Origin: Paraphysomonas bandaiensis
Taxonomy: Eukaryota; Protista; Chrysophyceae
Direction: 5' to 3'
Length of the DNA: 64,000 nucleotides
NCBI GenBank assembly: GCA_965644295.1
Contig: CBFFRP010000242.1
Coordinates: 124,001 to 188,000, forward strand
Every line of letters begins with the position of its first letter. Positions within the stretch are counted from its first letter, which is position 1. Below are positions 53 through 55,435 of this stretch, piece by piece. The translations under genes were made by a program, and so were the position numbers. The notes beneath the pieces are model-generated. The model had not been told where the DNA came from. It saw only the letters and a program-made list of their open reading frames with translations, and did no database searches.

Positions 53-602
53 TCTCATATACACTGTGTTATTATATATATTGAAAGATTTGATCACAGG
101 AAAATGGTTGTGAATGTGTTTATCCCACTGGTATCCAACTATCTTCTTTCTTCCATGTGTTCCCTGCTACTGGCTAAGACCACAAGAGGGCCGATTCCGA
201 CGCTTCTCCACTGTAGATCAAAACATTTTGCAAGCCCTTCATCCACATACCTCCGAGCCACTGGGCACAAAACGCCAAACCCAGAAGGGTATATTACTGC
301 TTCCCCTGGTGCCTACCGTAAGGCACATAAGGCAGTCCCCGATGCAAACTTAACAAAGTATATGTGTAGTCTTATGCGTTCCAGTGTGGTAGTAGTAGAC
401 AAAGATCACTACTTTAACTTGTCATGCTGTACGTTGTACAACGTACCCTACATACGCATCTATGAATATAGCGAGAGTGGTCGCACCTTCAAACAATTCT
501 CGTAGCGCGAAATGGTAGGATATCAGGGTTTTTACTAGAGTTAGTAAACTGTATCTACTTGAATAATAGATGCTTATCTAGCTTGACTAGTTTGTCCAAA
601 TA

Positions 603-652
603 GCTACTAATCTGGTTCTGACTCTTGAATGCCTATTGATAAATAAACAGAC
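603..652. repeat. Dispersed ~48-bp repeat, copy 2
   Basis: Direct imperfect copy of 5..52 (shared gctactaatctggt.ctga.tct.ga...cctattg.taa). Confidence 0.7.
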
Positions 653-932
653 ATTTACTTTTCATGTTTTTATGAAGGCAGTTTTATGTCTAAAAGTTTG
701 TACAATTTTTTATGATGTTTTCAATGATATGTTTTGTACAGTTAAATGAAGTTGTATTTAACATCATAAATCAAGAACGTTTTAAACTTGATGAAGTAGG
801 ACAATAACAAAATTACAAAAAGTTAAAAAATAATGATTTCAGCTGCAGTCTGTCCTTAGTATAACCGACTACACAAACACTACAGCTTGGATACAAATAT
901 ACTCTCACACTCTACAGAGATACAACACAATC

Positions 933-4011: not shown

Positions 4012-7000
4012 CTAGATTTTCGCGGTTGCAGTGACTTTTGTGGTCGTGATCAAGCAATTGGAGTCTGTGTGACTGCAAAATTGACCAGACCCCATCGCAT
4101 TCCTAGCTAACACGCGAATGTAGTACACACGACCAGGAGTCAGATTCTGTATGGTGTAAGAAGACCCTGTCGTTGTGTGCTTTCCAGAGTCGAACCCCTT
4201 GAAGTCTGCACGCTCATTGTACTCAATCAAGTACTCAGTTATCGGAGTGCCACCATTTGATACAGGCAAACCACCTCCTATAGCAGTTGGGCAGTCATCG
4301 GGTTCTTCCGCGGTACCAGAGCATGGAATCTGATGCCACGGGACGCGCGGACGCTGCCAAGTAACATAAATTTGTCCACTTGATGCACCACTTGTAGCGG
4401 CAATGGTGTGAGGCTTACCGGGAATCTGCAAACCTGGTTTGGCGAAGTTCGGCACAGCATTAGCAGCAACACTTGGCCCAGCAGAATTAACGGCAAACAC
4501 TCGAACATAGTAAGTACGCCCCTCTGTCAAATAAGGGATAGTATAGGAATTAAATTCCGTTGCGTCTAATGTCACAGAATCTTTGTGCGGTTTAGATACC
4601 ACTCCGTTAAACCCTGGTGTAGTATCCCACTCCACAATATAGCTTTCCACCGCATCGCCCCCATCATTTTCCGGTAGACCAAACGAAACAGTCAACATCG
4701 AGTTAGAAGTGACAGCCAAGACCACGTTGGTTGGCGCACTGCTGGCTTCATACGGTTGGAGCGAGGACGGTGTACTAGAGGCAGCTGCACCATAACCTTG
4801 AGAGTTGTAAGCCATCACTCGCACAAAAACAAAGACACCTTGTTCAAGATCTGTAATAGTTTTGAAAAATGGTGCACCACCTTCCAAATACGTCACAGAG
4901 GTTGTCTTCGAATCGCTAAAATCACTGTTTACTGAATACTCAATCAAATATTCAGTAATCGTGTCCCCCCCATCACTATCTGGTGGATTAAATGTCACAC
5001 GTAAATCACACTTTGAGACTGTAGTCAATACAACAGAAGTTGGAGGTCCGGGAACAACCATTGGCTTCTGAGCAGAGGGGGCAACTTGAGGTAAACTAAA
5101 ACCAATTGAATTGTATGCGAAGACGCGGGCAAAATAATACTCTCCAAGTGTGAGGGCCTTATCATCAGGAACAACATGGGTTCCTATGCATTCGTCAAAA
5201 GACTCACCATCAACAAGTTGAGAAACTGTCAAACTTGCAGTAGCACCAGATTCAGTCCGCATGTTGTTTTCATAAACAGCGAGGGTGAAATCAAATGGAT
5301 TAGATGGTGAATTGTCCAAGAAGGAAACTCTCCAGGTGTAGCCATTTGTGGCATCTGGTTCGTCTCTGTCCACCTCAACACCAAGGACGATGGCTTCCGT
5401 CAAGAATTCTAACTTACTCTCTATCGAGCCAGAATTCTTCCTACGCGATAAACTGCAAAGCTCGCTATCAATACAAGCAACTCTTGAAGATGCCACAGTC
5501 CCTCTTCCACCAGAATAACGCAGGACCGTGGCTGTTGCAAGCGAAGAAGGACCATCATTGGGAAGGAATATATCACTGTCAAGTACAATACTGGTAGATC
5601 CATTCACGCTAACAACGTTAAATATCTGATCAGGGTACTGTTGCGACGACAATCGCACTCTGTCGTTCACGAAAAGAAGCTCACCAACATCAACACTGGG
5701 GACCAACGTGTCAGATCCATTGGTAATTGCTACCGTGAATCCAGAAAGTGTGGTCATAAATCCTACCTCGTCCGCTTTCGTTGCCGTCGCATCATAGGGA
5801 ATGAAGTCAGTAAAGTAATCGCGATTGTTAACAGAAAGAGAGAGTCTGAAGTTACCTTCAATAATAGGATCATCCACTAAACCAGCCGAATTGATCTGAT
5901 ATACCGTATGAATATTAGACGATTCACACATAATTTCATTGTAGATAGCAGTGGAGAAGTCTTCAACATTATCCAATTCCACACGGTACTTCAGAATCTC
6001 AGCGCCTCCATCAGACACAGGCGGGTTGTAGGACACTTCTAACGTACTTGCAGAACCGAAATTCACATCTACGGAAACATCTGTTGGAGGTTGAGGCTTT
6101 TGCTTTGGAGGTGTGGCGGAGAGTTCTGCCGGTTTTGTTGTTGGTCCAATTCCATAAGCATTTATGGCAGAAACAGAAACAAAATACTCTGTCCCAGGAA
6201 CAAGGTTCTCAATCACAAACGATCTATCATCCTTATCAACAATGCGCGCGTTGTACCCAGCTGGCATCTCACCAGGGAAAGCATCAGATACCTTGAAACC
6301 TGTAACATCAATAGAGTTGTCACCATCCGCAATAGTGGCAGTCACTTCAGTCGCACTGGTTACAAGATAGGTGTCGTCAACATAGATGGCAGGCATGTTA
6401 CCAATGTCACCAGTGAAAGTAATTTTCCACTCATAACCAGCATACGATGTTGACATATCCGTCACATTAACAAGTTCCTTTGTAACTGAAATCTGTCTGA
6501 TGGTGGAGAGCTGCTCCAATGCTCGTTCCATGACTTCTTCTGAGCAATCAGCAGGTAGGTAATGGGTGAACACCTCAGTTCCATTAAAAGCTAGACGGAA
6601 AAATCCATCCAACTTGTCCACATCATTGTCACCAACCGAAAGTATAGTTAAAACTTGAATTTCAGAAAATCCACCCACTCGACTTCCACTCTGCATCTCG
6701 ATGATATCAATATACTCCCCAGAATCTGCAATAGGTGTACCTAAGAATGGAACCATATCACCCTCGTTGAAATCCGACTCGAATGTAACTCTCCATTGGT
6801 ATCCCTTTCCAGGTAACAGTTCGCGAGTTACGGATACATCTCCAACGACGAAGTCATTTCCATCGTCACCAAAGTAGCCTATGTTGATTAATTCGGCTCT
6901 GAGATTAGCAGCCTTAATATTGTAAGGAAGTAGCCCAGTGACTCCACCAGAATCAGAAGTTGGTCCAAAGTTCAAAAGGAATGATCCGTTGACTGTTGGA

Positions 7001-10000
7001 GGGAAGACGTCAGACAAAAACCTAACCAGTTGAACTTCACGTATTGGCCTCTCTTCCCACCACTCTACTAGGTATCCTGTGATGGGAGACCCTCCATCGG
7101 TGTCAGTGCCAGATGCAGCAGTCCATTTCACAGTAAGATCAGTGATAGGGGTATCTTGCACAGTTGCATGGGAAAGTGAAACAGAGGCCGGCGCATCTGG
7201 TTCACCAGCAGGTGTGACTGCAAATGCAGTCCTAGTGGTGGGACTAGTACCGTTCACATTAGACACTGATACTCGAACCCAGTATGACGTTCCGGGGTTC
7301 AAATCATAAATTTCATATACTAGAGGACCATTGGAATATAACACTGGCACATTGTCGTAAATCACAGTTGCATTACCATAAGCGGACGTCTCAAATGTTT
7401 TCGACTCATCCCACTCAACATACAGATCCAGTATATCACTTCCACCGTCGCTCACGGGTGGCGTAATCAATATCTGTATGTGATTCTTACCAGATACAGT
7501 AGCAGTCACAGTGACAGGAGCACTGGGAGGTTGATCAGATGGAATAGCAGAGGCACTTTCACTCCACCGTGTATTATCAGGAACTTCACCTGTCGGATCA
7601 GTTTGTTGCACAGGAATGGAATTCCGAGCAGCAACACGAACATAATACCTCACACCAGGTGTCAAGTTGTCAATAATGTAATTATAAGGTGGGGTAATGC
7701 TTAGTGCAGTTCCAACGACTTCACATTCGCCAAAACCAGCCGTCGCACAAGTTGCATCATCAGATTGTGCACTACTGAACTCAATATCCGTGTCCCACTG
7801 AATGGTATAGCGATCAATCTCGCCACCATCGGCTGCAGCAGGAGGCATGAAGAAAGCCTTGATTTCAGTTCCTGATAAAACATCAAGAACAACTGAAGTA
7901 GGAGCACCTGGAATTTCTTGCGGCGTCTGCGCAACATAGTCTGTGTAATCACCGAAACCAGCACCATTATGGGCGCGGAGACGCAAGTAATACTCAGTCC
8001 ACGCGTCCAATCCACTAACATAAGTGCAGTTTCTACAATCATCAGAGCGAATAGAAACAGTTGAGTCGAGGGGATTTAATCCATGCTTCTGACTAGATAA
8101 AGGAAGAACAAAGTCTGTTTCAACACTCAAGAAAGTCACAGCCCATTCGTAACCACGGGCATATCTGTACACAGCTTCACTAGCTGAGTATTCACCCTTG
8201 AAATTAGTAACCACAGAAGAATCGGTACTCAATGCCAATGGCAATGTAGTATCAGAGCCAGCAAATGTATCGGCCACCTTGTACCAGTCATCACCAATGC
8301 GAATCAATTCACCCGCCGGAAGATTACTAAAATCACAACTGTCCTCAACACATTCCAGTTGTTGCATACCAGGAACGGCAACTACTCTCGATCCAGTTTT
8401 CAATGCACTGAAAGTACGTGACACTAACACTGTATTGATATCAGGAAGAGCTTCAAGAGCATGCCGTACATCGGCCGCAGAAGCTTCTGCTGAAATAGGA
8501 TTAGTGGTAACAGAATTATAAGCCAGTTGGAAGTATCCAGATGCAGATTGTCCGAGCACAGCTGCAGATTGTTCTCCGAACAAAGAAACAGCTGCCACAC
8601 GAACTCGTTGAGTATCATAATGAGCATGGACCGATATAACTTGAGATACAGCCGATTTAGAAGATCCAATTTCGACAGAGTAATAATCAATAGGAGAACC
8701 GCATATTCCCTCTTCTACTTGAGAATGGCTGCAATGAACAGGAGCTTCGATAGAAATCTTCAGAGAAGTGCCAAGCGCATCAGAACCCTTGACAGTTTCG
8801 AAAACACTGACAACAGCTCCGACGCCTTCTAGGGAGTTATAATACGGGATCAGAGGGGGGACATCACCGTGTACACTTCTGAATGTGACTAAGAACGAAC
8901 TTCCACCTTCAGTACCAATAGCAGATCTGGAGACATCTACTAGCCCAATACCAGCGATATTCTCCAGAGCAGCATCAACTTCTGAAGCAGTGACATCGTA
9001 GTTCAAATCAACTGTAACAGCTCCTCGATACTCCAAGTTAAACTTGCCACCGAGATAATTACCATCTTGGACCGTTGTAACAACAGCAGTCACACCAGAA
9101 CCAGTCAAAGAGTTAGAAATCTTTAGCGGATCAACATTACCGATAGCACTGAGCCACGTAATAGTCCAAACATATCCACCTTGGTTATCAGGTCCTGACC
9201 TGGAAACACTAACATCACCCACTCCATTGAGTAACTCCAACGCAGCCTCCATTTCAGATGCTGATATATCTGATGCCAAGAGTTTGCTCGCTCCCAGCAA
9301 GAAGTAACCACCAATATAATTTCCATCAATTACTGTGTTCTGATAGCAATTACCAAACACACTTGTCAATTCAGAATTCATGCCGCAAGTGAGATCGTAA
9401 ACATTTCCCATGGCTTCCTCGAATAAGACTGTCCATTGCAAGCCCAAGCGATCGTCTGACAGAGATCTTCTCGTATTGTCAATCTTCACAAAACTCGGTA
9501 GAATAGATAGCTGATAGTAAAACTCTTCAGCGCTAGTATCACCGGCAACCATATCAAACCCTGCCTTATCAATTGTTTCCTGCTCTACAGAAGCATCGAA
9601 ATATTCAGATTCCTCAGAATCAAAGTCAGTAAGAACACCCTGCAGGAAATGAGAGAACTGAGTACATACACTTCCGTCACCCATAGTAACTTGCAAAGTA
9701 CCGGGATAAGTTGCGTTGTCACCAGCACCCGAACGGTCATGCATAGCATTGCCATCAAAGAAGACGCTATACACATATCCGTAGTCGGAAAGAGAATTAC
9801 CATTACCATATCGCTCAACAAAGACAGAGTCAATATTTGAAAGATCCTCCAAAGCTTCCGTTAATGTTGCGGCAGTTGCATTCCAGTCAATGCAAGAGGT
9901 TGTGGTCGTCACACCAGCATACTCGAATGTTAGTTGGTACTGCCCTTGGGCAATATAGGCATCAGCGGTAACATATATGGTCTGAATTTCAGTATCAGTA

Positions 10001-13000
10001 CCGACAGTCATATCGTTATTGAGAGTTGCCACAGTCATAGTGGCATCATTAGTCAGAGAGACAAGAGGAGAACAGGTAACCAACTCGAGTTCCTGCACAT
10101 TTCCAGCAACTAGGTTCCCAACAAATGACACAGTCCAACCATACCCGAAATTAGAAGAATACCCTCCTGCTCCGGACCTGATAACATCAACATCATCAAT
10201 ACTGTCAAGATCCTCCAAAGCATTTTCCACAGTTTCAGCAGAGGAATCGAAGTCTAGACACACCGTGGTCTCATTCAACAATACAAAAGAGTCGTTGTAG
10301 TAGAAATACATGAGCTTAAAAGATCCAGATGACACAATGCTCCCAGATTGCAACCTAACAGTTTGAATCTCAGGGAAACGGACAGAGAAATTTCCCACAA
10401 CGGTCTCTGTCTCAGGGGTAGTCAACACAATCTGTTGGGTTTCAGCGAAAGGAGTTGCGGCTGTGGTAACGGTCTGAATCTCATCCACATGAGTGGCGGC
10501 CACCACAACTTCTTGCACTTCATCAACAAAAGGAACAGCGAAGGCCAAAAAGCTCTCCTCGTAGGTAACCTTGCTGTAAGGAATGGCACTATCCTGGGCA
10601 GAAAACGCTGTCTCAGAATTATCGCTGCTGTAGCCATGATAAGTTCCACGGGTATATGCATCTACTCGAATACCATACTCGATACCCGTGAGTAGATCAT
10701 GGAGCTGATGGTCAAGAGGATGGACACCTGTAACGACGTTATCGTACACAGACATAGTAGTGCCTTCAGATAAATATTTAGTGGCTGATGCAGACATAGC
10801 TGGAATATCTCCTAAGTTGGTATCAAACGTAATGGCCCAGTAATTACCGTTCACCTTATAAATTGGTGCACGTTCAATGGATGAACCTTTGTAAGTGGTT
10901 GAAACGCCGGCATCATCTTTCCTAGCTAGTGGAATATAGAACCGCGACAACTTAGTATGTTCAGCTCCATCCAACACATGTTCCATATCGATAAGACTGG
11001 AGAAATCGTAAGGATCGTCCAACATACAGCCGTTTGAATCATTGTATGATATTAAGAAGTCGTTGATATTCGCAGCAAATGTTTCTGATTCCCAGTATAT
11101 CGAATATACATAACCTCCAGCATTGTTGATCAAATCTTGACCACGAGTTACAGTCAAGCAGGCGTCGGGAGTTGAGCATAGGCCAGCAGCCACGTCGGCA
11201 AGCGCGGCTTCCACCTCATAATCATAGGAGTCCCAGTTAACACAAGTGGACGACCCGATTGACGTTCCATTAATTACAAAAGAAAACGACAGGACACTCT
11301 TGCCCAATGATGCAGGATTCCGGGTACTCAATTTGAATATCTCAACTGTCTGCTCTTCCACACGATACTGAAGAGGAGTCTTATACGCTTCGGCATAGCC
11401 GTTCGATTCTCTCAAATAACCACTGTCAGCTGTGTACGGTATATCACGAGGAGTTCCACTGCGAGGAGTGTAAACTGTAATAGAAGCGGAATCAGGGAGT
11501 ACATTGTCAACAGAAACGCCAGCAAACGTCCAAGAAGAACCCACTGCATGGCCGTTGGCACTATCAAATGTAACAGACACACCATCCCTCAAGTAAACAG
11601 ATACACCTGCAGTAATATTCTGTGGGTCTTGAACGGCAGGGAAATTCTTAGTCCACCACACGAAAGCGTCGTAACCGTGAGAAAAGATTATCGATACAGT
11701 GAATACGTCGTCACCCACAGCCGTATTGTTATAAAATCCAGAAACTTTAAGATCATTGTTCGATGTGGACGAGTTAGCTGAATAGTACAAGGGCTGAGAT
11801 ATGTCACCGTCATACAGAACTTGTAACTCCGCCATGTTTCCCTTTAACGGGGCCACAAAGGAAATGTAATACAAGAAGCCATACCCTTCCTCCTTAGAAC
11901 CACTCCCGGAAGCAGTAACAGAAACGTAGTTCGCTGTGGGGTCCAATCCAAATGCATCAGCAACAATAGAATTGATAACAGTCTGAAAATGAGATGTATT
12001 CTTTTCCCACGACAGTGCAGCGCTCACAGTTGTGTTACTACCATCGAATACAAACTTGAACACATCTCCATTGGACCTACCAACAGCTTCTGATGAATAG
12101 AATAGAACCGTTTGGGTTTCCAAGCCATCACCATCAACAATTGTATCAACATCAAGAGACCACCTCATACCATTAAATTGAGATAAACTTTCGTTACATC
12201 GTGCAGCAACTATGGCATCAACGTTAGCAAGGTGTGGTCCAACGAAGAAAACGTCATAGTAGTAGGAATCTTCACCCTCTTGCTTTACCTCAACAGAGAA
12301 GTCAGGAATGCCACCTTCAAGCAGATAAACATCGAGGAGTGTTCCATTATATCCCACAGCAACATCAATAGTATCATCCAAAGTAATTTCCGTATCGCTG
12401 TCTCCAGTCTGCGCACCAATCACTACAAAAGTCTTTAAAGGAGTCGTAGAACCAGGAACCCGAATGCGATCACCAATCTGCAAGCTGCCAAGAGTAGACG
12501 CAGTTGTATACACCACATTACTGCCGGGGAGAGATATGTTCAACTGTAATGTATCGAGAGCAGTTTCCACACCATTGAAATCTGAGCACCCACCATAAGA
12601 ACCCTCATCGATTACACGGAAGGACGGTAGAGAGCGGCCAAGGGAATCACTTCTACCAAAAGTTAATTCTGGGCCATTAAACTTAAACGTGTACTGATAA
12701 CCATAGCCAGATGTCACAGTACCGTCACCAGTACGTCGAATTGTAACGTGATCATCATCATTTGCACCACCATCACTATTGAAATCGATCGAAAGAGCGT
12801 CAAACGCCTCCTGCATTTCCGACGCAGTAGCATGATAACTAATACAATCAGTGATATATTCCGAACCCTCGAAAGAAACCATGAGTTTGTAATACCCTCC
12901 CGAACCTTCCATTATTGCTGCATCAGCCGTGGAAGTCAACGAAAGCACGGTTGCCGTAGAATTTCCAGTACCGTACCGCGACGCTATAGCACTTAAGTCG

Positions 13001-16000
13001 TGCTTCACAAACATATCAATTCCAGTATCTCCAACAGTGACATCAATAGCTTCCTGGACGGAGAATAAACTCCCACTATCAATGCTTGTTACCGTATACT
13101 CTAAATCAGACCCATCAAGGATGATCACATCGCCCACCTCGATAATACCAAAGATACTCGATGAGGTCGAAACTTGCTCAGTTGACAAAATCGTAGCGGT
13201 AGGTGGAAGCTGGTGTTGGTATAATGCGGGCAGGTCATTCAACATGTCTTGCACATTGGACCCTTCCGCTCCCCACTCAATACAATCGGTTGTGCTATCG
13301 ATAAGAAGTGAACCAGAAGATGCGGTGATAGTAAAGAAACCACCGTCGATATAGCCAGATTCCACATTGGTACGAACACGTTGTACTTCAGTGTAGCCAC
13401 CTTCAACTCGAGTGACCACAGTTACAGTTCCTTCAATCGTATCAGATGGACAGGCGGAAGCAGTAAGTTCAACAACATTACCAACCACGGACTCCCCGTT
13501 AAAGTATATAGAGAAAACATAGCTCTCCCTTGATATACTCACAAGACGCGTAACCATTACGTCACCTTCCCCGACAGATTCCATACTGTCGAAGAAAGCT
13601 TCCATTTCATTCGCGGCGGTCATTTCGCCAGATAAGGGACGGGAGATACAATCAGTGCTTTCAACATAGCCACCGTGGGTAAAAGTCAACACAAAGTTTC
13701 CACACTCAGCAGTGGCATTAGCACAATCAACAGACACAACCTGAACCTCAACACCAGTCTTCAGTAATTCGTAATTATCCGCCCCTATGCGAAGTTGCTC
13801 TTGAGGAAGAAGAAGAGCAGCAGATTCAGATTCAACAGTCAACATTGGACTTCCAGACGTAACACCCACAAGACTATAGAACTCAGCTCCGTCAATAGAT
13901 TGCAAACTATTTTCCGCATCTACGTCACCTAGACCTAAGCCACCAACGCGGAATAAATCTCCAGGTGAGATGAATTGACGAATATCAGGAGGACACTGGT
14001 CAATATCTCCACACACTGCCTCTGTGGAATCATACTCGACGACCAGTACATTGGCATCCCTATCCGCACGGACAAATAATCCATCCACCTTTTCCATTAA
14101 CCTAAACTCACCAGTGGTTGCGACTTCACCAATGCTGGACAGCGATTCCAACAAATACTTCGCTTCCAATGGCTGCTGGTTATACCGAATAGGTTCTGTG
14201 GTGACACCATCAAAGGTCAGAGTAAACGTACCATCGATAGGAGTAGACCCCTCGGCGTAATTCACAGTTTCCACCGTACTATCAGTACCTTGAAGGTCGT
14301 CTGCATCAAAAGTAACAGTGATAGGATCAATATTACCAGATCCAGGAGGGAAAGAGAACCCGGCGTAAGTGCCAGGATTACTCAAAAAGAACACTTGCCA
14401 CTCATACCCACCACGAGTTCCGTCTTCAACCAACACATCACCCCAACCACCACTTTTTGCTGTGGGGTACTCAGATCGTGAAACATGAACAGCGCCAACA
14501 GTTGTCATTTCTTCAAATTTACGTTTCATCCTAGATGAGGACTCGTCATACGCAACAAGTCTACTTCCAGTAGGAGAATGTAAATCTATTGTGTATGTGC
14601 CACCAAGCCCTTCTGATCCCTTGACGAGTTCATAAACATGAGGGGCATACCGAACATTGTCCGTCGCATTCTCCTGGACAACAACGAGGGTAGGAATATC
14701 ACCAGCACCGGGAGGGGTATTTCCAGGATTGTTGACGAAACGGATTTCATACTCAACAACACCATACTTTCCAATAACTTGCCGTGTGACATTTACGACA
14801 TGATCACTTACACTCTCTAGATAACTCTTAAACGACGTGTTAGTGTAGTCATTAGATCCCTCAGGAGGGGCATTCCAGAGAAGATCTGAAGTGGAGTATG
14901 TCTCGCCGTCAACATAAAGCACAGAAAACCGGCCACGTTGAACCACACCATGCTGCACTCCTGCTTCTTCCGCAGTCATTCCATATCGTTCCCCTTCAGC
15001 AACAGTAACAATAGTTGACGTCCAATTAACGTTATCAGAGGCACCCAGTTTGCAGTTTGTAATATTTAACCCTCCTGGTGTCCCAGGATTGGGTATATCA
15101 CCTTCGTCGAAAAAGTACAACGTAATAACCTGACCATTTGCAGCAGAAACAGTATCTGAAGAAACTGTGACGTCAACACCACGAGATGGAGCATTGAGAG
15201 CAGAAATGTTGTTATGCAAGTATTCTTCAATCACTTCAGCTGGAGAATTCATCCAAATACAATCAGTAGAGTCTCCCATCAACGAAAGAATATACGATTC
15301 GGAATTCATGTCAGTGTCGTGCAGAACATCATGAATGAAAATTCGCTGTACTTCTTTAGATCCTGATGGCTCATCAGTGGCAGCATTATCACCGTCGAGA
15401 ATTGTAACTCTAGTACAGTCATAAGTGTTCACGTCATTCGACAGGCAATTTCCTCGCAAAGAAGACTCATCGTACTCTAATTTCGGTACATCGCCCGGAG
15501 AGTTACAGAGGTTGTAAATGCTATCCTTCTGTTCACATTGATCACCCCACTGACCACCAGGTGAGTCCTTGTCGCGCAAAAACGTAATACTCCACGTATA
15601 ACCTCCGTTCTTTACATTAACATCAGATCTGGACACCTCAACATCACCAATATTTGCCATATCCTCTAATATTTCCTCCATGGAGGTACCATCACCACCA
15701 GAATCAGTAGCAGTGGCAGGTGCATTATGTGCTATATTAGCAGATGTGATAGAATCCTGAATGTTAATTACAAGATGATCAGTTGTGTTGAGCATAAGGT
15801 TGAAAGTTCCGTGCAAAGGAGCAGTTCCAGGAACAACCTCCTCTACTGAGCAACCATCTGTAGGCATAGCACCATTGGTAGTGTATAATGATGACGCAGT
15901 ACAAGATATCATATCCTGGTTCCCGACATTCTTTCCCCATGCCTTCGAATACCCACTATCCCAAACTGCATCCCATGTCGTTCCAGATCCAACCCAGTTT

Positions 16001-19000
16001 CCAGGAACAAAGTCACTGTCATGAGTAATTGTAGGATCAGCCCATTGATTAGATGCAAAAGTGATCGACCACACATAGCCGAACACTTGGGTAGATGGAG
16101 TGGTCATTGGACCATCTCGAGTAACAATAACCTCAGACGGTGAGATAGAAGCAAGGCTATTTAATTTCTTCTGCACTTCAATTGCCTCAGCATCATATGG
16201 GATCGCACCAGTACTATAGCCACCGAATACAAGCTGGAAGGCTCCTTGAACTTGAGAACCTTTCCTGTATTCTTCCACGTTCACACCTGCATTTACGACA
16301 TAGGAGCCGACATTGCATTCAGAGCTGTCTACACACAACTCACCGACTCCTAGATCTGAGGCAGCAGTCGAGGTTTTCGTGATGGAAGTTGTGACCGCTT
16401 TAAACATATTTGTGTCGCCACCAACGGTTTCACCAGTGAATTCAACAGAGTACGTGTAGCCCATGACATTGTTTGGCTCCGCAGAGCGAGTAACATCAAA
16501 CAAATCCTCATTTCCAAACATGGTGTACAAAATGTTTTCAAACTCTGATGCATTCAATGCCTCGCCAGTAATTGGACTTACAACAGGAAACGCAGTAGAT
16601 CCCGATGATATGGTGGCGCCACTATGGTCAACCCAAGAAAGCCCAAAAGAACCTCCAACTTGATTGCCCTCAATAGCGGTTCCAGGATCATCAAGATTCA
16701 GAGGGTCATTCTGGGTACCAATAGAAACGACTGGAACATACGTGACATTACTAGAATTCAATGCGTTGACCACTCCCATTGGGGGAATGTCGCCATTTCT
16801 GGAAACAAAGGTTATAGTCCACACATAACCACCAGTCCACCTATTGTAACCTGAAGGAATATACACTGAACGGACAACCTCCACATCACCAAATGTATTG
16901 TTCGCACTTGAAAGGACATTGGCAAGACTATCAGCATCAATATTCCATGGAACCATATCAGCGGTGTCAACGACAGGTACACCGTTGTATGCATGTGGAA
17001 ACGTTAGATTCAATTGATAGGTGCCATCTAAAAACGAGCCCGGTTGAGCAGTACTCACTATACAGCTAACATCATTGTTAGAATTAGTCGAGTTCAAATT
17101 AGAGACGTCACAAGTCATTTCGTTCAAATCACCGTGCTGTTTGTGAAAAGTAATACTCCAAATATAACCGACTGTATCAGAACTGGAGTCGTAATAACGA
17201 CGGCTGACTTCAATAGAATCGGAATCATCATTGATTACATCGGACAGCCCTCTAAGCTTAGTGACAATTTCATTAGATGTAGCAGCTTCATCAATACTGA
17301 AAGTCGGGTTCACTCGGAGAGCGTTACACGCTTCACTGACACCATCGAATTCCTCAGGATCAGAATAGAAAAAACCAACCTCGGCATCAGTTGTTTCGAA
17401 ATCATCAGAGCTGTATCTCGGACTAATCGTTGCGTTGTTATCAGAAGATTCTAATGCAATAATCTGGTGGTATGAGTTCTGAATACGAATGAACTGAAAT
17501 AGCTCTAAATTACCGTCGACAGACACAACCCTTGTGCCCTCATCGGATACATTGACCGACACAGGAACAGTGCGAGACTCACACTCATACTCAAGGTAAA
17601 ACACACCATCAGGCTGGTTGCCTTCCACAAGAGTATGCGCAACATTGCCCTCGCTGCGAACATCTCCAATCGTAACATCAAAATTTGCATCCGAATACTG
17701 TGTCAAGTACGTCGGCGATCCACTAGTGTAAACAACACTAGAATCATACACTTCCAACGCTGGAACGTTTCCGCGTGTATAATCACTTACAAAAGTAACG
17801 TTGAAAGCATGCAAATAGATTCCATTTGTCCCAACATCGAGCACATACGCAACTTTTTGAACAACAACGCATTTGCCACTACCATCCGTCATAAAGCTCG
17901 CGCCAGTTCCAGACAAGGAACACAACTCACTTTCAATTGCAGACACACTATCTGTCAGCGATATGTCATTCGTCATACACGTAGTATCTGAACACGAGTA
18001 GCCCGTAACACCAGCATCATCCAAGGCGATCGTACACCAGTTCGTATCAGAGTTGTCAACATCCGTACCACATTTATAAGGTTCAAACTGGAGCTTAAAT
18101 GTACCACTTATGTTAGCCTCTACAGCCGGACAAGGGTCACCTAACGCACACCCTGAAGTATCTGCCCCTGATACTATAATTCCAAAGATTTGCACTTCGT
18201 TAACCCGAGGTGTTGAAACCTCAACAACCTGAATTTCAGGTACATCCTCGACATATGTTTGTACGAGCTGCACTTCAGCAACGTGAGTGCCAGTCAACTC
18301 AATAGTCTGCACTTCATTTACGTCAACTGCTGTGGTCGTAACCCTCTGTACCTCATTCGTAACATCATCACAATGAGTTGTAACAGTCTGGATTTCATCC
18401 TTCTGGTTGACACGGGTACGAATTATTTGGCGCTCATTTGTCACTTCGGCAGTCATGCGAATGGCCTGAACTTCCATATCAACATCTGATGCCGCAACAA
18501 CTGTCTGGACTTCAGACACAACTGGAAGGTCAACGACGTCATAAAAGGCAAAATCAGCTTCATTTGAATACATCAACCTATATTTCTCCAAGGTGGCGCC
18601 ACCGTCACGTACAGGATAGTCCCACGAGGCGAACAGAGAAGTGCTGCTGATAACATCTAAAGTGACATTCTCAGGGGCACCAGGAAGCTGATCAACTGTC
18701 GTAACTCCACACACCGCTTTGCAAACGCAGCAAGCTTCATCTGCAGTTTTCCCGACACTTCTTTCTCCAATCTTGTCAGCATTGTCTACAGCCCCACAGC
18801 CGCAATTTTCGCCACTACTACACTCACCTTTGCGTGCGTCTAACATAAAAGCATAATCAGCGCATGTGTTGCCATTGAAATCTTCCCAGCTGTCAACATC
18901 AATAAAAGCATACCCAGCGACACCTGCCCCCTTACTATTGAACGCAGTGACGCGGATGAAGTACTCTCGCCCCGGCAAAAGTACAGTTTCTTCTACTCCA

Positions 19001-22000
19001 GTAAGGATATCCCGTCCACCGATGAGATACTCTAAACTCTGAAGGTTATATAGAGTCACCGCGGTTGCAGGAGATGCGAAGTCGTCACGCAAATCCCATT
19101 CAACAACATAGTGTGAAACTGGTGTTCCTCCATTACCGCCATACTCGCATGCATCAGAATTCGGAGCATCCCACTGAACCAAAATACCAACATCTGATGT
19201 CGACATCGCACGGATATTCACAGGGGCTCCCGGGGCACGGATTTCACCAATCGCTGACCTGGGAGACGGAAAGCTGGCTTCAGACCATTTGTATCCGTTA
19301 AATGCATAAACTCTCGCATATCTCGGCACCTTGCTCGATGACGCTGCAATATCAATATCATGGCAAAACGAAGGCCCATCGGTAGGGGATACCATAATTT
19401 CAGCAGTATGTCCACTGACATCCATATTCCTAAAATCGGCAGTAAGATCCCATTGGACTTTGTACTTCGTAATGGTTGCACCACCATTCGAAATAGGAGC
19501 GTGCCACACGACTTTAAGACGTGATGCAGACAATGCAAACATGGTGGCATTGAACGGAGCAGAAGGGGAAGTTTTAGGAGCCACAAAAAGCGGACTACCA
19601 ACAGCAAACTTGGAATACCCTTCATCGTTATGAGCACGGACACGAACCTGATATTGTACTCCCATTTGTAGTCCAGAGATTACTGTTGAACGCACCTCAG
19701 AACCGGATACAAACTTAGAACCATAGTTATCAGGTACAACACCATCATGAGCTGTAGATACACCCGCCCTAGCAAATGGACCAGCAAGTGAGACATCATT
19801 TACGTACATATCAGGCAAGTCAAAGAGTTCAGACAAAAATGTAACTCTCCAGTCATATCCAAAGCCATTGCGGAAACGAACCACAGACACATCACCAATG
19901 GTAGAAAGTTGCTCTAGCGCAGCTTCCATTTCGAGAGCTGTCAGATCATGTCTCAACGGATGGGTTGAGTCCCCCATAAAGCCAACTCTAAATGTACCAG
20001 ATAGTGGTGCAACACCTTCACGAAGAGTATGTACTTTAACAATAGGATTAGTACCAGCCCAATTATCGGATGACGAAGGGATCAGCTGAGGCAAGTCACC
20101 AACTTGAGTCGTGAATGTCACATCCCAAGTGTAACCATAAGTCCATTTGTACACCTTGGCATTAACTATATCCTCTTCATCGAAAGACGCTGCATTGAGG
20201 TCACTGTCCCCCAAGTCTACATAGTTCGAATCAACTGTGACTAGGTAAAACGGAAGGTTTGAAATCCAAACTAGATCTCCTCTTTCCAACTGCGAAGTTG
20301 ACCCCGCTAATACAAACGCTCGTGTACTCCCAGAAGTAACGTTAAACCGAAGACCTTGAACAATCCTACGTGAATACTCACGAGTGACCTCAACTTCGCC
20401 AATTGTAGATAAGCGAGCAAGTGCTAGCGCAACAGAATCTTCCCCCACGGCATTCGCATCCCAAGCAATGTTGTCAGTCGTTTCACCATCAAATTCAAGG
20501 CGGAAAAATCCAGCTAAATTATTTTCGTCTGACTCGACAGTGATACGCTGAATCTCATCGAGAGAACCTGAGGAAGAAGTCGTAATCACTTGAACTTCAT
20601 ACTCAGGCACTGAAGTGTAAGACTCCACAAGGTACCCATCGGTTAAATATTTTTGAGACGTCGAGTCAGTCCAAGACACACTCAAAGCAGATGATGATGA
20701 AACAGAAATCAAAACCATAGAGGGTGCTGGAGGCTGTCCCAAAGCAACAGCAGTAGATACTGAAGATACGAGTGAATACCCTCTGTTGTTGTAAGCAGTA
20801 ACACGTGCAGAGTACTCTGCTCCTGCTTCCAAGGGCCCCAAAAAGATCTGAAGAGGGGATGTACCTTTAATTTCCTCAAATACTACAACTTCAGCACTGG
20901 ACGCCGGAGTCAGATCTTCATAAGACACTGTCATCGGAGGAAGGTTCCCAGCTCCCTGAACCCTCTCGTTCTTCTGGTGAGTAAACGTAACTTTCCATGC
21001 ATAGAGTTCGTAGTCACTGTCGAGAACCTCGCGATTAACGTTGACAGTGTAGATAGTGTGTAGAGACTCTAACTTTTGCTTGAAAGACACAGCGGACTCG
21101 TTATGAGAAATGAGATCTGTATCATAACCCTCCATATTCAGCTTAAACGACCCATATATTCTAGACAAAGCAGTGCACTTAACAGTCTGGACCTCATATG
21201 TATATGAGCCAGGAACAACATCACCAAAGCCCCTTGTTACTTCCTTGACTGTCATACGGGGATCGTCCCCGGCCAACATTGAAGAATCAACTTGAAGTAG
21301 TCCAACGTCACCATGCACACCTTGGAAAGTGACCATCCACTTGTAGCCCCTGTTAAAGACAGACCGCGTGACAGTCACAGGAGCAACAGCCACATGTCGA
21401 GTGCTGACGAGAACGTTTAGAGCGATTTCAAGATCATAGGCGGATATGTCATGAGCAAGGTCAGCTGTCATTTTACCACCAAATGCCAGAGTAAATGTTC
21501 CGCCACGGGTTTTAACAGCGTCACCTGCTCTGTAGGATATCACAATCTGTTGAACTTCAGGGACGATTGAGTATGACCTCGACATGTAATCATCACCTTC
21601 TGGGTCAAAGTTCCGAGAAGTATCCCACTCAACAACGTAGGTGGTGATTGGAAGACCACCATCGTGCTGAGGAACTTGGTAGCTCAGAGACAACGAGTTA
21701 CCACTTCGGTACTGTCCAAAAACTACACTCTGTGGGCGTCCAGGTAAACCACCAATGTGCTCAGTTTGTGCAGATACGAGAGAAGATGGCGATGATATAA
21801 ACTTTGAATTCATTGAGCGCACTTGTGCAGTATAGTTGCGGGAATCATCCAAAACAAGATATCTGGGTGAATATCCCGCAAATACCTCTGCCTGTCGAAC
21901 TGTATCGACGGCAATCTCAACAGCCGACAAATTCGATGACTGGATCGTAACCTGGGGAATACCATCATTTGTTCCATACTCACCCCAAAATGCAATTGAG

Positions 22001-25000
22001 TACACATAGCCATACGAATACGGGGCAGTTAAACCATCACCGACTCTTTTCACAGTTACCTTGTCCACATTCGGCAATGACTCCAAAGCGTTCTTCCACT
22101 CATCGCTTGTGGAGCCATAGGCAAGAATTGTTGAGTTACTATATTGGCCACCGTAACTCAGCTGGAATGTGGAACCCATGTTGTCCGCATTGACCGAAGC
22201 ACTAGAAGACGCACCACGGAATGCAACAGTTTGTATTTCCGACAGAGATCCCAGCACATATTCTCCAGGTGCAGAACCGTCTGTTCGATGTACACTGACC
22301 TGAACATTAGTTCCACGCCAGTCCGACTCAACAGCAACACGTGCTGAACGTATGTTCGCACTGGCAGCTTTGAAAACGATACATCTCTCATAGCCATAAG
22401 CATGCCTGAACCCTGTGGCAGCTGTGAACGGCACACGAACTCCTTTAGCATAATTCTTCCCATCAATAACAGTGAATTGCAACTGATCCTCCACAATCCA
22501 TAATGAATCACCATCCGACATCACTTCTGACCATGATTCAGATGTCAGCAACTCAACATATTCGTCAAATACATACACATCTTTGTCTTGCCCAGTAACA
22601 GCTTCTCCATGATAAGGCGGATCAATAGTTGCGCAAAACATATTCAAGCATACCCAGCTATCAGTTACGTTGTACAGGTCCCCATCAATGTAATAAAAGG
22701 TTGATGAGTTCATCTCCCTTGTCGTGACAATTGAGGTTGAACCGACCATGGCAGTGTCTAGCATGTTATCACCAAGAATAGTCACGCGCCCAGGTAATGC
22801 ACGCTTGGAGTAAGACATCACTCTAAAGTTCGCCACGTCACTGATTACGTCACTACCACTACCCATTACCTCACTCAAATGAATTTCAGTGTATGAAGAG
22901 TTTACTACTTCGAAGCCTGTGACATACCTACCAGCAGTAGTGCTTCGGTAGGTGTCGAAGACAACGTCATCGCCAACATGAATACGATCAGAAAGGTTTG
23001 CTGCTACACCGATCACAGATGAATTTTCAGTTATCAGTACATCATATCTAGCATAGGCAGGTTGCATATTGCGTCCATACCCAAGCATTGTCACCTTACC
23101 AACATTGGTTAAATTGTGGAGAGCATTCATGAGAGCGGCATCCGACGCATCCCATGACAAGGGGATAGTACTTTCATCACCTAGCAGTATCCTGAAATGA
23201 CCAGATATATCGTCTTTATCAGCAACAATCGATATATTGAGCATTTGGTAAACTCCAACAGCAACATCAGTGCCAGTAACATGCTGATCATCTATAACCA
23301 TCGCCTCTACATCACCAAAACTTCTCGGAAAAGTTACAACCCAGGCGTGGTTATTGACATCTTCCCCCAAGTAATGCTTCGTCACAGATACACCATTGAC
23401 ACCGCCCATTGCATTAAGTACACTAGAAACATCAGCGGCGTCAGCGTTAGCCGATATGGCATCTGATTTCATGCCGTTCAAATAGATATAAAAGTATCCG
23501 TCTGGTATTCCTGTAGAATCAAGCACAATAGTTTGAACTTCAGGAGATCCATGCAGACATGGAATTTCTTCATCTACAGCTATAACGCTAACATCTGTTG
23601 TCGAGAACTGTTTAGCGCTGCAAGATGCAGCATGGGATGTCCAGGAATTTCCATTGTGGACAGTACTCACTTGGAACAGTGGCCATTCCAAAGTTGGTGC
23701 CAAACCCTCAACAAAAATATGCAAATCCCTGATGCTCCTTGAGTAAACATCGCGAACACGCTCCTCAATGAAAACATCTCGCACAGAATCCAAACTTTCC
23801 AATATAAGCTCCAACTCATTTGCACTGACATTGAAATCGATGCAAGATGTCTGCTCTTCGCCAACATTTAGACGGAACGTACCAGTTCCAGGACCATCGT
23901 TTGATGTGTCGTGAGAGATACTCAAAACTTGGTGCTGCGTGAATGACCCAATACCAATACGCTCACAATCCGAGTAAACCCAAACTGCACCGTAATCTTC
24001 TGGAACCTTGGTATGAGTGCGATTAATATTCGAAAAGACAAACTCGTGCGTGAGAGATTCTGATGTTAGCATTGACGTATCCACTGTGATTTCTCCCGTG
24101 GCCAAACCGCCTATACCGTGTGTCAATAGAATGTCGTACAGAAACCCCTCACCAATACTTGCATTAAGCGGGGTAACTGTTACTTCAGAGTCACTAACAG
24201 ATGGAAGGAAGTTAAATGCCTTCTCCACATCCGCAGCAGTTGCGCCAAACGGTAGAAGGGCAGTATCACTACCTTGGAATGAAATCCTCCAGAAGCCACT
24301 AGAATCTCTCATGGCACCTGCATTATAGAGAACAAACGAGTGAACGGACCGCACATTGAAGTTCGAATCAGAGGTATACTCCAGTAAGTATTTCTCAATT
24401 GATGATCCACCATTATCACCAGAGATAGCAATATCAAATTCGAGCTGACTTGCCGACACTGGTGACATAGAGGAAATAGCTGACCTTCCAGGCTCGCCAA
24501 GAGCGAGCAAAGACAAAGGGTTAACCCCAACACCATTATTTTGAACTTCACTAGACGATACTCCAGAACCCGCCGAGTTCCCAGCAGTTATTTCGACAAT
24601 GTATTGCGCACCTGGAATTAGGCCCGTAAATTCCTCCACTGTATCGAGAAGAGAACCTTTGACTATTTCGTTCACTTTTACCACCAGGCCGTTGCCTCTG
24701 AGGGAACCACCAGTTGCCGGCACTTTGTACTCCTCCCACTGGGAGCCGTCAAGCCTTCTGAGGCCACCATACTGAGGAGTAATATCGTCCACGAAAGTAT
24801 CCACTGTGATAAGTGGAAGATCGCCCAAATTCGACAAGAAGGTTATTGTCCATTCATATCCTCTAAAGGTTTTGTCACTATGTTCAATGGTCTTGCGTTG
24901 AACATTCACATCACCAACAGTTGACAAGGATTCAAACTTCGTTTCAAAGTCTTTAGCCGTTTCATCTGCTCGGAATAGCACCTTCACTGAAGACAAGTTG

Positions 25001-28000
25001 AAGTCAAGAGCGAAATGTCCAAATAAGAGACCATCAGAAGCTTGAACTGACACAGTCTGAACTTCGAAAGTACGGGATGATATCGTCCTTTCTTCAAACG
25101 TGTTGTCGAAAGATGGAGCTTGCCCTGCACGCAGGAGAACCCTATTAACATCGCCATTGAGAATGCTGCCACCAACTCCGGCAGACACTGTGCACGTTGG
25201 CCAGGTGGCTGAATCTGGAACCGTGGCTAATGTAGTATCGCTTTGCGTCACTACCGTTCCATCATAGTTATCAACTAAAACCCAAGTACTCTCATTATAA
25301 TACACCGAAAATGGAGAGTCCGGCATGGAATAGAATCTACGACCATTTAAGAAGCGGTCAGACACATAAATGCCATCTACATCACTTAAGCACGAGATAT
25401 TAATAGCAGAAGACGAATAATCTGTCACATCAAAACAAGTAATATCTCCACAATATTCAGTTGATCCTGGAGTTGATGTGAAGGACACGGTCCAACTATA
25501 CCCGTTGTCCTCGTTGGGTCCATACCTTTCAACATCAACTGTTCCAATCGCCGGAATGAACTCCAAAAGAGAATCCATTGCTAAAGTAGTTGCATCGTGT
25601 GAAACAATAGCATTCTGCTGTCTATAAACAGCTACCCTGTCGAAATCAGATGGTACTGCAGAGTCAAGCATTATACCAGAGGCATTAACATTGGTAACAG
25701 TGAAATACGACTGAACTGAAGGCAAATAACCCGCCTCGCGGCCTTCGACGTACACGCGATCATTAGCACGCAGCTCAGATGTAACATCCAAATCCAAAGA
25801 TAAAAATGATTCACCACTAGCAAAGTTAGCAGCTCCCATCAATGTATCGGATACATAAAGCGTCTGATTCAAGGCCCCTTGAGTGTGGTATGGAATGAAC
25901 GAGGCAAAAATATCATTGACAGATGCAATCATGAGTTCCTCATCTCCAACACGCACAACGACACCAGGGGCCAGCAGCGCATTCAATGAGGCAGAAGCAA
26001 CAAGACTTCTTTCGCCAGGAATAATGGTTACAGTGATAGGCATATCGGCATCATCAGAAGCAATCTTATTCATGTTTCCTCGGAAACCGTAACGAACCTC
26101 AAAATGTCCAGATATAGCGGCATCATTGATAGCACTGGTCAGCACTTCAAACTTTTCAGGTACAAAACCAGCGTGACCAGGAACAGAAGTCGATACAAAA
26201 GCTGTCGTACCTCCGCGAGACAAAATCGCAGTTTCATTATCACCATAACATGAAATCCAATTAACTGCAAGCTGAGGAACATCACCATTTGAAAGGTATT
26301 CGCCATCGAATTCGATAACAGCCACACGAGTCACTTCAGTAGACGAAACTGAAACAGCTACAGAGTCAATCATATCGAGCTCCTCAATTATAATCTCTAA
26401 TTCAGCAGCAGAAACAGATGCTCCAAAGCAGCGGGTAGTTTCGTCACCGACAGAAAGTGCTAGAGAGGCAGAAAATGCACCACTGTTATCACCGATGACC
26501 AGCTTTTGTACCTCATGCACCGGCGTTGCTATATTAACAGTAAATGACTCAACACTAGCACCGTTAGATCCCTCAGCTCTAAGAGCGGGAAGGGTCCAGT
26601 CAACTGAAATCGAAGTGCTTGTCTGATGGGTAAGATGCCCAACACCAATGTATTCAGGAGACTGGATAGCAGAGTGACTTACAGGTGAACTTGGATAGCC
26701 TTCGTATACATATGGGGAACACATCACATCACCCCAAACTTCCTCAAAGCAAGCTTTAACTCGGATGAAATACTGCACACCAGCGACAAGATCATCAAGG
26801 ATGACATGGTTATCAGTCATATTCACAGTTCTAGAATGCAGAGGTTTAGTATTTGATGCAGAACAAATCGTCGCATCACACCACGAAATAAACGAAGGGT
26901 TCGTATCGTACTCTACAATATAAGATCCGTTCACGACATCTTCCTGAGGGAATATTGGTTCGTCCCATGAGAGTTTCAAACTCACCGTCGCGTATTCCAA
27001 TGACGGTGACTGAACAGTTGACACAGAAAGATTAGTTGGAACTGAAGGAATATGCGTGTAGCCAACAATTGGGAAAGTTGCAGGGTACGCATAATCAGAT
27101 AAGCCAATCGAGTTGATAGCCTGTACACGGAAATAAACAGGAGTATTGACAAAGGTGGCATCAGTGATGACTGTAGAATAAACCGGGACACCAGTAACAA
27201 ACGGGGGAATACCGGCAACACTTTCGTAGGCTTTCCCTGGGTTCATTTGCACAATGGGTACATCGCCACTTCGCATGATAAACGACACGAGAAAGGCAGT
27301 GGACGTACCAACGCAATCATGTTCGCCAGCATTACCAGTTCCAATAATTTCGACTGACACTTCACCCACACCAGTCATAGCCTCAAACGCATCCGTAACA
27401 GAAGCAACTGAGGCACCCGAGGAAACATTTCCGCTGAATCCGAAAATGGAAATTGTTGTGTCAACAGAATCACAAAAATACAAGGTCTGCTGCTCCTCAA
27501 CAGAGCCAACGAAAACAACTGCAGTGTCATCACTGAAACAAGAAGTTCTATTTGCTGAGTCACATGCCAACAAGTAATCTCCAGTCGCACTGAAGTGGTG
27601 TCGCACCATATGCTCATACGTACTACGACGAATATCATATTGTGACCCGGCCTCGAGAACCTCATGAAATGTAACCATCCATACGTACCCACGGTCCATA
27701 CCACATGTATTCTGCCCAACTTCTTTTGAGCAAAATAATTCACGACTAACCGAGACGTCACCAATGGAAGAAAGACCTTCGAGGGCAGTCTCCATGTCAG
27801 TCGCACTGATATTGTACTCAAGCTCGTCAGTGTGCTGACCACGGAAATGTAACACAAAGGTACCCATTGGGTTGAATCCATGTCGAGTAGTCATGGTAAC
27901 ACTCTGAATCTCGTGTCTCAAAGAGATATCAGAACTCAATATGTTTGAATCGTACAACGGTTCGCCATTCGATCCCGAATCAAAAGATGGAGAGGTATCC

Positions 28001-55000: not shown

Positions 55001-55435
55001 GTAACTGTGATAACTTGAACCTCATTAACTGGGGTGGCAAAAGTCTTCACAACTTGAACTTCGTTGACATCATCAGCATAAGTAGAAATTGATTGAATTT
55101 CGTTAGGTCCAATGTAGTTGGATGTCGTAATGGTTTGAATTTCCGAGGAACCAGGGTCCGTATCCCACTCAACCTATTAAAAAATTAGCCATTTAATTCA
55201 TAATGATGACCTTGTTATACCTTGTAGCTATGAATGGCAGAACCTCCGTCAGAGAAAGGAGAATTGAACTCAGTGAGGATGGAATCGCCACTGATAACAG
55301 TCAGGTCCAAGAACGGAGCAGATGGTACATCTAATTAAAGCAAATTTACGACTATAAATAAAAATCACAAGGTGTACCTAAACTGTTGATGATAGTTGCT
55401 GTCGCCAAACACAGCCATGAGGCAATACGAAACAT
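4012..55435 (-). CDS. Giant secreted modular protein, 17,109 aa (FN3 / filamin-like / PA14 / EVQ-repeat); exons 55435..55378, 55330..55221, 55173..4012
   Basis: The 17,012-codon ORF extends in frame to an AG acceptor at 55174-5. Two 47-nt GT-AG introns (55174..55220, 55331..55377) give MFRIASWLCLATATIINSL-DVPSAPFLDLTVISGDSILTEFNSPFSDGGSAIHSYKVEWD, a signal peptide followed by the first FN3 half. Exon lengths 58+110+51162 = 17,110 codons including stop. Repeated FN3 motifs (P.DGG..I..Y.VEW / L.PG..Y.VRV.A.N..G). Confidence 0.93.
18706..18888 (-). other. 8-cysteine module, copy 2, in the giant protein
   Basis: WEDFNGNTCADY...ECSSGENCGCG...TADEACCVCKAVCG; 34/61 aa identical to the copy at 38146..38328. 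Confidence 0.85.
38146..38328 (-). other. 8-cysteine module, copy 1, in the giant protein
   Basis: WRDSEGHDCDHY...ECTTGVLCGCG...SADEACCACKSTCG. Confidence 0.85.
39267..39700 (-). other. PA14 domain 3 in the giant protein
   Basis: GLIGNYFNN...RIDSIVDFWW...DYISIRWTGYILP...VNDGVRMWINDELIID...IKIEYRENTG...LAWSS...EVIP. Confidence 0.85.
42950..43525 (-). other. PA14 domain 2 in the giant protein (with Cys-rich insert)
   Basis: GGLLATYY...RLDKTIEFDWG...DYFSVKWSGYV.SP.SG.YTF.VHSDFG..L.ING...IEIIYY...VTWSGP. Confidence 0.8.
47075..47481 (-). other. PA14 domain 1 in the giant protein
   Basis: GGLAASYFDN...RIDPVINFDW...DYVSIKWAGKI...YADDGARLYID.ELVIDMW...YYDIAIEYRE.TG.A.IQL.YSS...KQVIP. Confidence 0.88.

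What the first reader, a model, noticed from the sequence alone, without database searches (positions are those of the whole stretch)
14100..18519. Matryoshka repeats: N stacked 'EVQ' strands followed by exactly N strand-less bodies
Seen: the basic repeat is an E(V/I)Q strand plus a body (GxFxLxF..T..I...A..V...LE.L..IG.V.V.R...G..W.VTF...G....L). At 18519..18181 nine EVQ strands are stacked at ~13-aa spacing. They are followed by nine bodies without a separate strand of their own (ISGTFKL, PDGVFYL, LDGTYQL, VGGSFGL, VQGAFQL, LHGTFNL, QRGRFSV, LGGTYTI, IDGTFTL). The count matches elsewhere: 4/4 at the N-terminus (~55145), 4/4 (~52710), 2/2 (~50185), 2/2 (~48510), 2/2 (~45453), 2/2 (~20600) and 3/3 (~10520). 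Inference: each domain is inserted after the first strand of the previous one. The chain would run out as an extended strand and return, each body capturing one strand by intramolecular strand complementation, giving a double-tracked, mechanically locked stalk. I know of no description of this architecture in a eukaryotic protein; it is the best candidate for a new system in this window.
Basis: partly seen in the sequence, partly recalled or inferred. Interest (0 to 1): 0.92.

Follow-up and report, generated by a model that had tools for sequence, protein, structure and literature searches.

The report
Nine-deep nested domains in giant protein
A 17,000-residue secreted protein of a marine stramenopile (the group of golden algae and water moulds) builds side branches by running its chain outward, leaving one strand per building block, and completing the blocks in reverse order on the way back, nine levels deep, deeper than the deepest nesting named in a 2026 survey.

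Summary
Observation confirmed. The stretch lies in a 17,053-codon exon of a secreted FN3/filamin/PA14 protein with about 77 copies of a ~100-residue domain. First strands and domain ends balance like brackets in all 31 clusters (24 of 154 tokens hand-placed); a blind parse of 122 homologous clusters gives r=0.90. Two AlphaFold models support last-in-first-out pairing: a 4/4 cluster (pLDDT 96.5) is nested, and with nine strands but six bodies strands 1-3 stay disordered. A relative balances 28/28 from a 14-strand stack. Corrections: the cluster is 15/15, closes near 10,730 and sits in one FN3 loop, so it is a side branch; the domain is known (Bxb1 capsid/gp23 extension, mastigoneme proteins, FliD-like); this is recursive domain insertion, not pilus-type strand donation. 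Nesting is known to six levels; I found no description of this family's architecture. Function is inferred (surface fibre or adhesin); a Saprolegnia orthologue is cyst-expressed. The scan noted the same grammar earlier on another piece of this genome (s1-448339).

The parts
55378..55435 (-). Exon 1: start codon and signal-peptide-like N-terminus
   Evidence: read from the sequence; GT/AG introns in frame; not confirmed by reads
55221..55330 (-). Exon 2: first half of the first FN3 domain
4012..55173 (-). Exon 3: 17,053 stop-free codons; FN3, filamin and PA14 domains plus about 77 EVQ domains; no C-terminal membrane anchor seen
18525..18685 (-). First half of the FN3 domain that hosts the nine-deep nest
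   Evidence: sequence
18170..18519 (-). Nine stacked first strands S1-S9, 13-14 aa apart
   Evidence: S4-S9 are strands at pLDDT 76-92 in the model with six bodies
17630..18111 (-). Body 1, completes S9 (tip of the branch)
   Evidence: contiguous with S9
17038..17613 (-). Body 2, completes S8; carries a small beta-barrel (about 17356-17583) in its hairpin
   Evidence: structure match range 97..493 and barrel matches 315..390
16666..17031 (-). Body 3, completes S7
   Evidence: ranges starting 80-83 and ending 617-622 (two rows run on to 686)
16258..16659 (-). Body 4, completes S6
   Evidence: ranges 67-71..755-757
15823..16251 (-). Body 5, completes S5
   Evidence: ranges 54-58..896-903, Z up to 14.2 to Bxb1 gp23
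15370..15816 (-). Body 6, completes S4
   Evidence: S4 ordered in the model; partner inferred from order
14960..15354 (-). Self-contained EVQ domain (own strand) between bodies 6 and 7; absent in two distant orthologues (P0063, P0044)
14614..14940 (-). Body 7, inferred to complete S3
   Evidence: not modelled
14245..14607 (-). Body 8, inferred to complete S2
   Evidence: not modelled
10730..14238 (-). Body 9, inferred to complete S1; split after its helix by five further EVQ domains and several barrels
   Evidence: not modelled
10618..10720 (-). Second half of the host FN3 domain
   Evidence: sequence
53166..55143 (-). N-terminal nest, depth 4 (6/6)
   Evidence: four strands and four matching bodies by eye in the full-length orthologues
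51364..52731 (-). Pure 4/4 nest, modelled as nested
49632..50196 (-). 2/2 nest
47730..48816 (-). 2/2 nest with flanking units (4/4 island)
44103..45453 (-). 2-strand stack with an inner unit, plus one further unit (4/4 island)
19854..20598 (-). 2/2 nest
8898..10521 (-). 3-strand stack with two domains inside the first body's hairpin (5/5, depth 4)

Best explanation
The repeat is one ~100-residue alpha/beta domain whose two ends lie side by side, so it can be plugged into a loop of another domain, including the loop after its own first strand. Repeating this gives N first strands followed by N bodies: the chain runs out as an extended strand, one domain length per 13 residues (about 4.3 nm, inferred), turns at the innermost domain and returns, each body closing around its strand in reverse order. 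Each nest hangs from a loop of an FN3, filamin or other host domain, so the protein is a long backbone with side branches of encoded length (about 40 nm for nine levels, inferred). Supported by computation: counts, nesting order in models, antiparallel pairing of the first strand with the WxVTF strand. Inferred: tip-to-base folding, dependence of each body on its strand, branch stiffness. Most likely role (about 50%): a secreted, glycosylated surface fibre or adhesive scaffold whose branches act as spacers.
For: Bracket balance in 31 of 31 clusters; blind parse r=0.90 over 122 FN3-bounded clusters, exact match 32 of 61 against 14.6 expected, maximum 25 in 10,000 permutations; P0021 returns to baseline after 28 openings and 28 closings from a 14-strand stack, then 15/15 (four strand calls scoring under 5 ignored). 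4/4 model pLDDT 96.5, pTM 0.84; single-domain matches span only S4+B1, S3+B2 and S2+B3, apart from one poor row. Nine strands with six bodies: residues 1-41 (S1-S3) disordered, S4-S9 ordered, ranges nested. Covariation in 443 intact domains is strongest on and beside the antidiagonal of an antiparallel pair. Orthologues differ by whole balanced blocks (9/9 against 7/7). Role: signal peptide, three PA14 regions, 160 N-glycosylation sequons, D+E 13% against K+R 5%; orthologue P0090 is Saprolegnia SPRG_03974, highest in cysts and listed as a candidate hair-bundle or adhesion protein (PMC5771568).
Against: No experimental structure. Pairing was read from aligned ranges, not from coordinates. The outermost pairs (S1-S3 with bodies 7-9; S1 with body 4 in the 4/4 model) were not resolved. 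Covariation favours nested over in-order pairing only weakly (59 of 87 stacks; deep stacks inconclusive). Homologous clusters are not independent. No localisation or knockout data were found for this family; the Saprolegnia paper itself says its analysis cannot establish the bundle components.
Confidence: 0.85

Rival explanations
1. Same nested structure, but the protein is part of the tubular flagellar hair (mastigoneme), for example a lateral or terminal filament or a length ruler.
For: The same domain occurs, un-nested, in this genome's mastigoneme-like genes, which match PDB 9UFE at E down to 7e-40; the domain profile hits 9UFE chains weakly (E 0.18 and 0.53). The family spans oomycetes, ochrophytes and Cantina. 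Saprolegnia expression rises in sporulating mycelium and cysts (PMC5771568).
Against: No EGF repeats were found in the parts of the giant protein scanned; none of the 9UFE chains is a giant protein; a Phytophthora zoospore vesicle proteome with mastigoneme proteins does not mention fibronectin proteins in its main text.
Confidence: 0.2
2. In the cell the strands are swapped between chains: stacked strands of one molecule are captured by bodies of another, cross-linking a meshwork.
For: Strands must wait up to about 2,600 residues for their body; single-chain AlphaFold cannot show swaps.
Against: Exact within-chain balance, linker lengths that fit return along the same track, and confident single-chain models.
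Confidence: 0.08
3. Stacked strands form their own sheet or solenoid, or pair in order, and bodies fold alone; equal counts are a by-product of duplication.
For: Covariation cannot exclude other registers in deep stacks.
Against: Unpaired strands are disordered in the model, and the first three, not the last three, are the ones left out; aligned ranges are nested; intact copies use the strand as part of the domain.
Confidence: 0.04

Closest known systems
Mycobacteriophage Bxb1 tail-tip cage gp23 (PDB 9D93) and capsid/tail-tube C-terminal extension (9D9W, 9D9X, 9D94); phage Patience accessory protein (8GIU)
   Same: Same domain: profile E 9e-39 to gp23, 2.5e-5 to the capsid; Z 10-14, rmsd 2-3 A. 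In gp23 three first halves precede two second halves, which implies three-deep self-nesting (inferred from match order).
   Different: gp23 nests at another loop (after the helix), so it has no strand stack; depth 3; a virion protein.
Geovibrio thiophilus flagellin D4/D5 and FliD D2/D3 (PMC11532411; PDB 9AU6, 5FHY, 6KTY)
   Same: Similar fold (Z 5-6, only middling); the paper states that D5 is a duplicate of D4 inserted in one of its loops and that D4 is related to FliD D2.
   Different: Two levels of self-insertion; bacterial; no sequence similarity shown here.
Contractile tail sheath 'Russian doll' domains (PMC6088184)
   Same: Domains inserted in one another; PHROG tail sheath match for 4 of 28 repeats; Z 6-7 to sheath outer domains.
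   Different: Up to four different domains, not one repeat iterated.
Cyanobacterial RNA polymerase RpoC2 Si3 (PMC13114784)
   Same: Recursive insertion dominated by one small domain family.
   Different: Unrelated fold, intracellular, six levels (deepest case named in that survey) against nine here and 14-15 in P0021.
Stramenopile tubular mastigoneme proteins (OCM; PDB 9UFE)
   Same: Carry the same domain between EGF repeats.
   Different: Small proteins, domain intact and not stacked in the copies examined.
Streptococcal antigen I/II stalk and donor-strand complementation in chaperone-usher pili (from memory)
   Same: Out-and-back single-chain stalk (antigen I/II); a strand completing a sheet (pili).
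   Different: Helical stalk without repeated domains; pilus strands come from another subunit and complete an Ig fold.

Membership tests
Bxb1 capsid/gp23 extension domain family | Sequence profile similarity over the domain | tested here: met
   E 8.9e-39 (gp23), 2.5e-5 (capsid)
Bxb1 capsid/gp23 extension domain family | Same fold | tested here: met
   predicted model Z 11-14, rmsd 2.0-3.1 A over 87-121 residues
Bxb1 capsid/gp23 extension domain family | Part of a virion protein | tested here: not met
   intron-containing eukaryotic gene with signal peptide, FN3, filamin, PA14; domain homology only
Recursive (Russian-doll) domain insertion | A1-B-A2 order with the inserted domain itself a host | tested here: met
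   nested aligned ranges in two AlphaFold models and bracket balance
Recursive (Russian-doll) domain insertion | Experimental structure of the discontinuous domains | not testable with these tools
   no solved member of this family found
Donor-strand complementation (chaperone-usher pili) | Incomplete Ig fold | tested here: not met
   best fold matches are alpha/beta domains; Ig matches only Z about 3
Donor-strand complementation (chaperone-usher pili) | Strand supplied by another subunit or chaperone | tested here: inconclusive
   single-chain models and within-chain balance favour the domain's own strand; swaps between chains cannot be modelled here
Titin (database label of orthologues) | Tandem I-set Ig plus FN3 array with a kinase, intracellular | tested here: not met
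   no I-set or kinase family in the roughly 13,600 residues scanned against Pfam; signal peptide present
Tubular mastigoneme proteins (OCM/Mas) | EGF-like repeats around the domain | tested here: not met
   no EGF family in the scanned parts; present in separate genes on contigs C457 and C406
Tubular mastigoneme proteins (OCM/Mas) | Localisation to flagellar hairs | not testable with these tools
   no data found

The most novel reading that the evidence does not exclude
An old stramenopile family encodes tree-shaped single-chain filaments by a bracket grammar: branch length is set by the number of stacked strands (about 4.3 nm each), branches are stiff two-track rods that fold from tip to base while strands wait unpaired for up to thousands of residues, and they build a visible surface structure (cyst hairs, flagellar-hair filaments or attachment threads) whose dimensions can be read from the gene.
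Probability: 0.3. Interest if true: 0.88.

Novelty: new variant of a known kind. Interest (0 to 1): 0.72.

Why it matters
It extends natural recursive domain insertion from the six levels named in a 2026 survey (PMC13114784) to nine here and 14-15 in a relative, with one repeat and a countable rule. That gives a clean system for asking how very long-range contacts fold in the secretory pathway, a natural template for branched single-chain protein design, and a structural reading of giant cyst-expressed proteins of water moulds that databases mislabel as titin.

Tried and rejected
Pfam, NCBIfam: no family for the repeat. Covariation test of register: first pass favoured nesting (62 of 87) but a stricter version was weak and inconclusive for deep stacks, so it is not counted as strong support. 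Eighty bacterial loci with the domain showed plain tandem copies and no stacks; the one bacterial nest is P0137 (Chloroflexota MAG, 8/8 counting one degenerate strand; my early note said 7/7). The Bxb1 paper (PMC12124961) and a paper for 9UFE were not available, so gp23 nesting is inferred from match order. Ten literature searches found no description of this family's architecture; most subscription papers are not covered. Assembly artefact rejected: bodies are divergent, and contigs from four other runs match 13500-19000 at 99% or more without joints. The spliced model was not searched as a joined sequence.
Full report
The gene. The window holds one stop-free frame of 17,053 codons on the minus strand, 55173 to 4012. 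Two short upstream exons with GT/AG introns add a signal-peptide-like start at 55435 and the first half of an FN3 domain. Pfam finds FN3, filamin and PA14 domains but nothing in the finding's region. The genome is 62.6 Mb and encodes tubular mastigoneme homologues, so the host is a stramenopile; its 18S stretch looks chrysophyte-like to me from memory, untested. Contigs from two marine metatranscriptomes and one transcriptome cover 27 to 30 of 30 bins of 13500-19000 at 99% identity or more without joints, consistent with transcription and no intron, although DNA carry-over is not excluded.

The observation. Shuffled copies of the protein give 0.015 close strand pairs. Treating each first strand as an opening bracket and each WxVTF strand as a closing one, all 31 clusters balance, for 77 domains, maximum depth 9; 24 of the 154 tokens were placed by hand. 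The nine-strand cluster is larger than reported: a complete unit sits between bodies 6 and 7, and body 9 is split by about 1,080 residues and closes near 10,730, where the second half of the host FN3 resumes. The domain accepts insertions at five places: after the first strand, at the hairpin tip, before the helix, after the helix and before the last strand.

Blind test in homologues. A fully automatic parse of 122 FN3-bounded clusters from 168 homologues plus this protein gave a correlation of 0.90 between surplus strands and surplus bodies; 32 of 61 stacked clusters matched exactly against 14.6 expected by permutation. Orthologues are not independent, so distinct architectures matter more. 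P0021 opens with 14 strands, contains nested stacks of 3, 4, 2, 2 and 2, and returns to baseline after 28 closings, where its interrupted NHL-like host resumes; its second cluster is 15/15. A paralogue on contig C184, with an IPT/TIG-like host, balances 7/7, 5/5 and 9/9 by eye. Its relatives P0087 (9/9) and P0124 (7/7) differ by one contiguous block of three strands and three bodies. A Chloroflexota protein has 8/8 near-identical copies, but 80 other bacterial loci show plain tandem copies. Strand spacing across homologues is 13 residues in 299 cases and 14 in 111, about one domain length as an extended strand (inference).

Structure models. The 4/4 cluster folds at pLDDT 96.5 and pTM 0.84 with all four strands ordered. 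As a planned test I folded all nine strands with only six bodies: nesting predicts S1-S3 left out, in-order pairing predicts S7-S9. Residues 1-41 came out as coil at pLDDT 40-47 and S4-S9 as strands at 76-92; ranges give S8 with body 2, S7 with 3, S6 with 4 and S5 with 5. In 443 intact domains the first strand covaries with the WxVTF strand mainly along an antidiagonal (Z up to 14), as for an antiparallel pair; matches to RRM-like folds suggest it is an inner strand of the sheet (inference). Covariation within stacks only weakly prefers nesting.

What the domain is. Its profile matches Bxb1 tail-tip cage gp23 (E 9e-39), the Bxb1 capsid extension, and weakly two chains of the tubular mastigoneme structure 9UFE; the model matches the Bxb1 domains at Z 11-14 and tail-sheath, FliD and flagellin outer domains at Z 5-7. 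So the fold is known and has a history of being inserted: sheath domains are described as a Russian doll (PMC6088184), Geovibrio flagellin D5 is a copy of D4 inserted in its loop (PMC11532411), and the order of matches in gp23 implies three-deep nesting at another loop. A 2026 survey names six levels in cyanobacterial RpoC2 as its deepest case (PMC13114784).

How it most likely works. Each nest is a hairpin at the level of domains, hanging from a loop of a backbone domain. The innermost domain is complete first and the rest should zip back to the base (inferred). Tension along the backbone bypasses a branch; only load on the tip would be shared by the two tracks, so locking is a hypothesis. 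The family occurs in Saprolegnia, Aphanomyces, Phytophthora, Albugo, Pythium, Thraustotheca, Aureococcus, Phaeothamnion and Cantina. P0090, which keeps the nine-strand stack, is Saprolegnia SPRG_03974, nearly silent in mycelium, highest in cysts and listed as a candidate component of the hooked-hair bundles (PMC5771568). With signal peptide, PA14 domains, 160 sequons and strong acidity, a surface fibre or adhesive scaffold is my best reading (about 50%); a flagellar-hair part is the main rival (about 20%).

Verdict. Real, conserved and well supported computationally; a new, much deeper variant of recursive domain insertion built from a known domain, with unproven function.

Noticed in passing
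window 38184 and 18744 (minus strand): Two copies of a ~70-residue cysteine-rich module, one inside and one next to an FN3 domain; no Pfam match; absent from orthologue P0002 at the second site but present in P0003.
   Followed up: no
window 17356-17583 and many other sites in exon 3: A small beta-barrel is repeatedly inserted into EVQ domains; fold matches (Z 5-6) include phage tail-tip, decoration and ATPase N-terminal barrels.
   Followed up: partly
G000:C184 about 47800-58500 (L013, L014): 13,038-codon paralogue with IPT/TIG-like host and cysteine-rich repeats; nests of 7, 5 and 9.
   Followed up: partly
G000:C457 140400-142600 (L019) and C406 219100-220500 (L022): Mastigoneme-like EGF genes with intact EVQ domains.
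   Followed up: partly
G000:C53 (L015), C123 (L018), C645, C378, C169: Further large open frames (1,477 to 8,969 codons) with EVQ domains; C53 and C123 show small stacks inside propeller-like and other hosts.
   Followed up: no
P0137 residues 785-1580: Chloroflexota MAG protein, multicopper-oxidase-like by eye, with an 8/8 nest of near-identical copies: a recent, probably independent origin useful for studying how nests grow.
   Followed up: partly
window 58541-60348 (minus strand): Intron-containing lariat debranching enzyme gene (Pfam DBR1, E 4e-11).
   Followed up: no
window 60686-61948 and 62577-63314 (plus strand): Two secreted-looking, propeller-like genes without Pfam match; the second ends in a membrane helix.
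   Followed up: no
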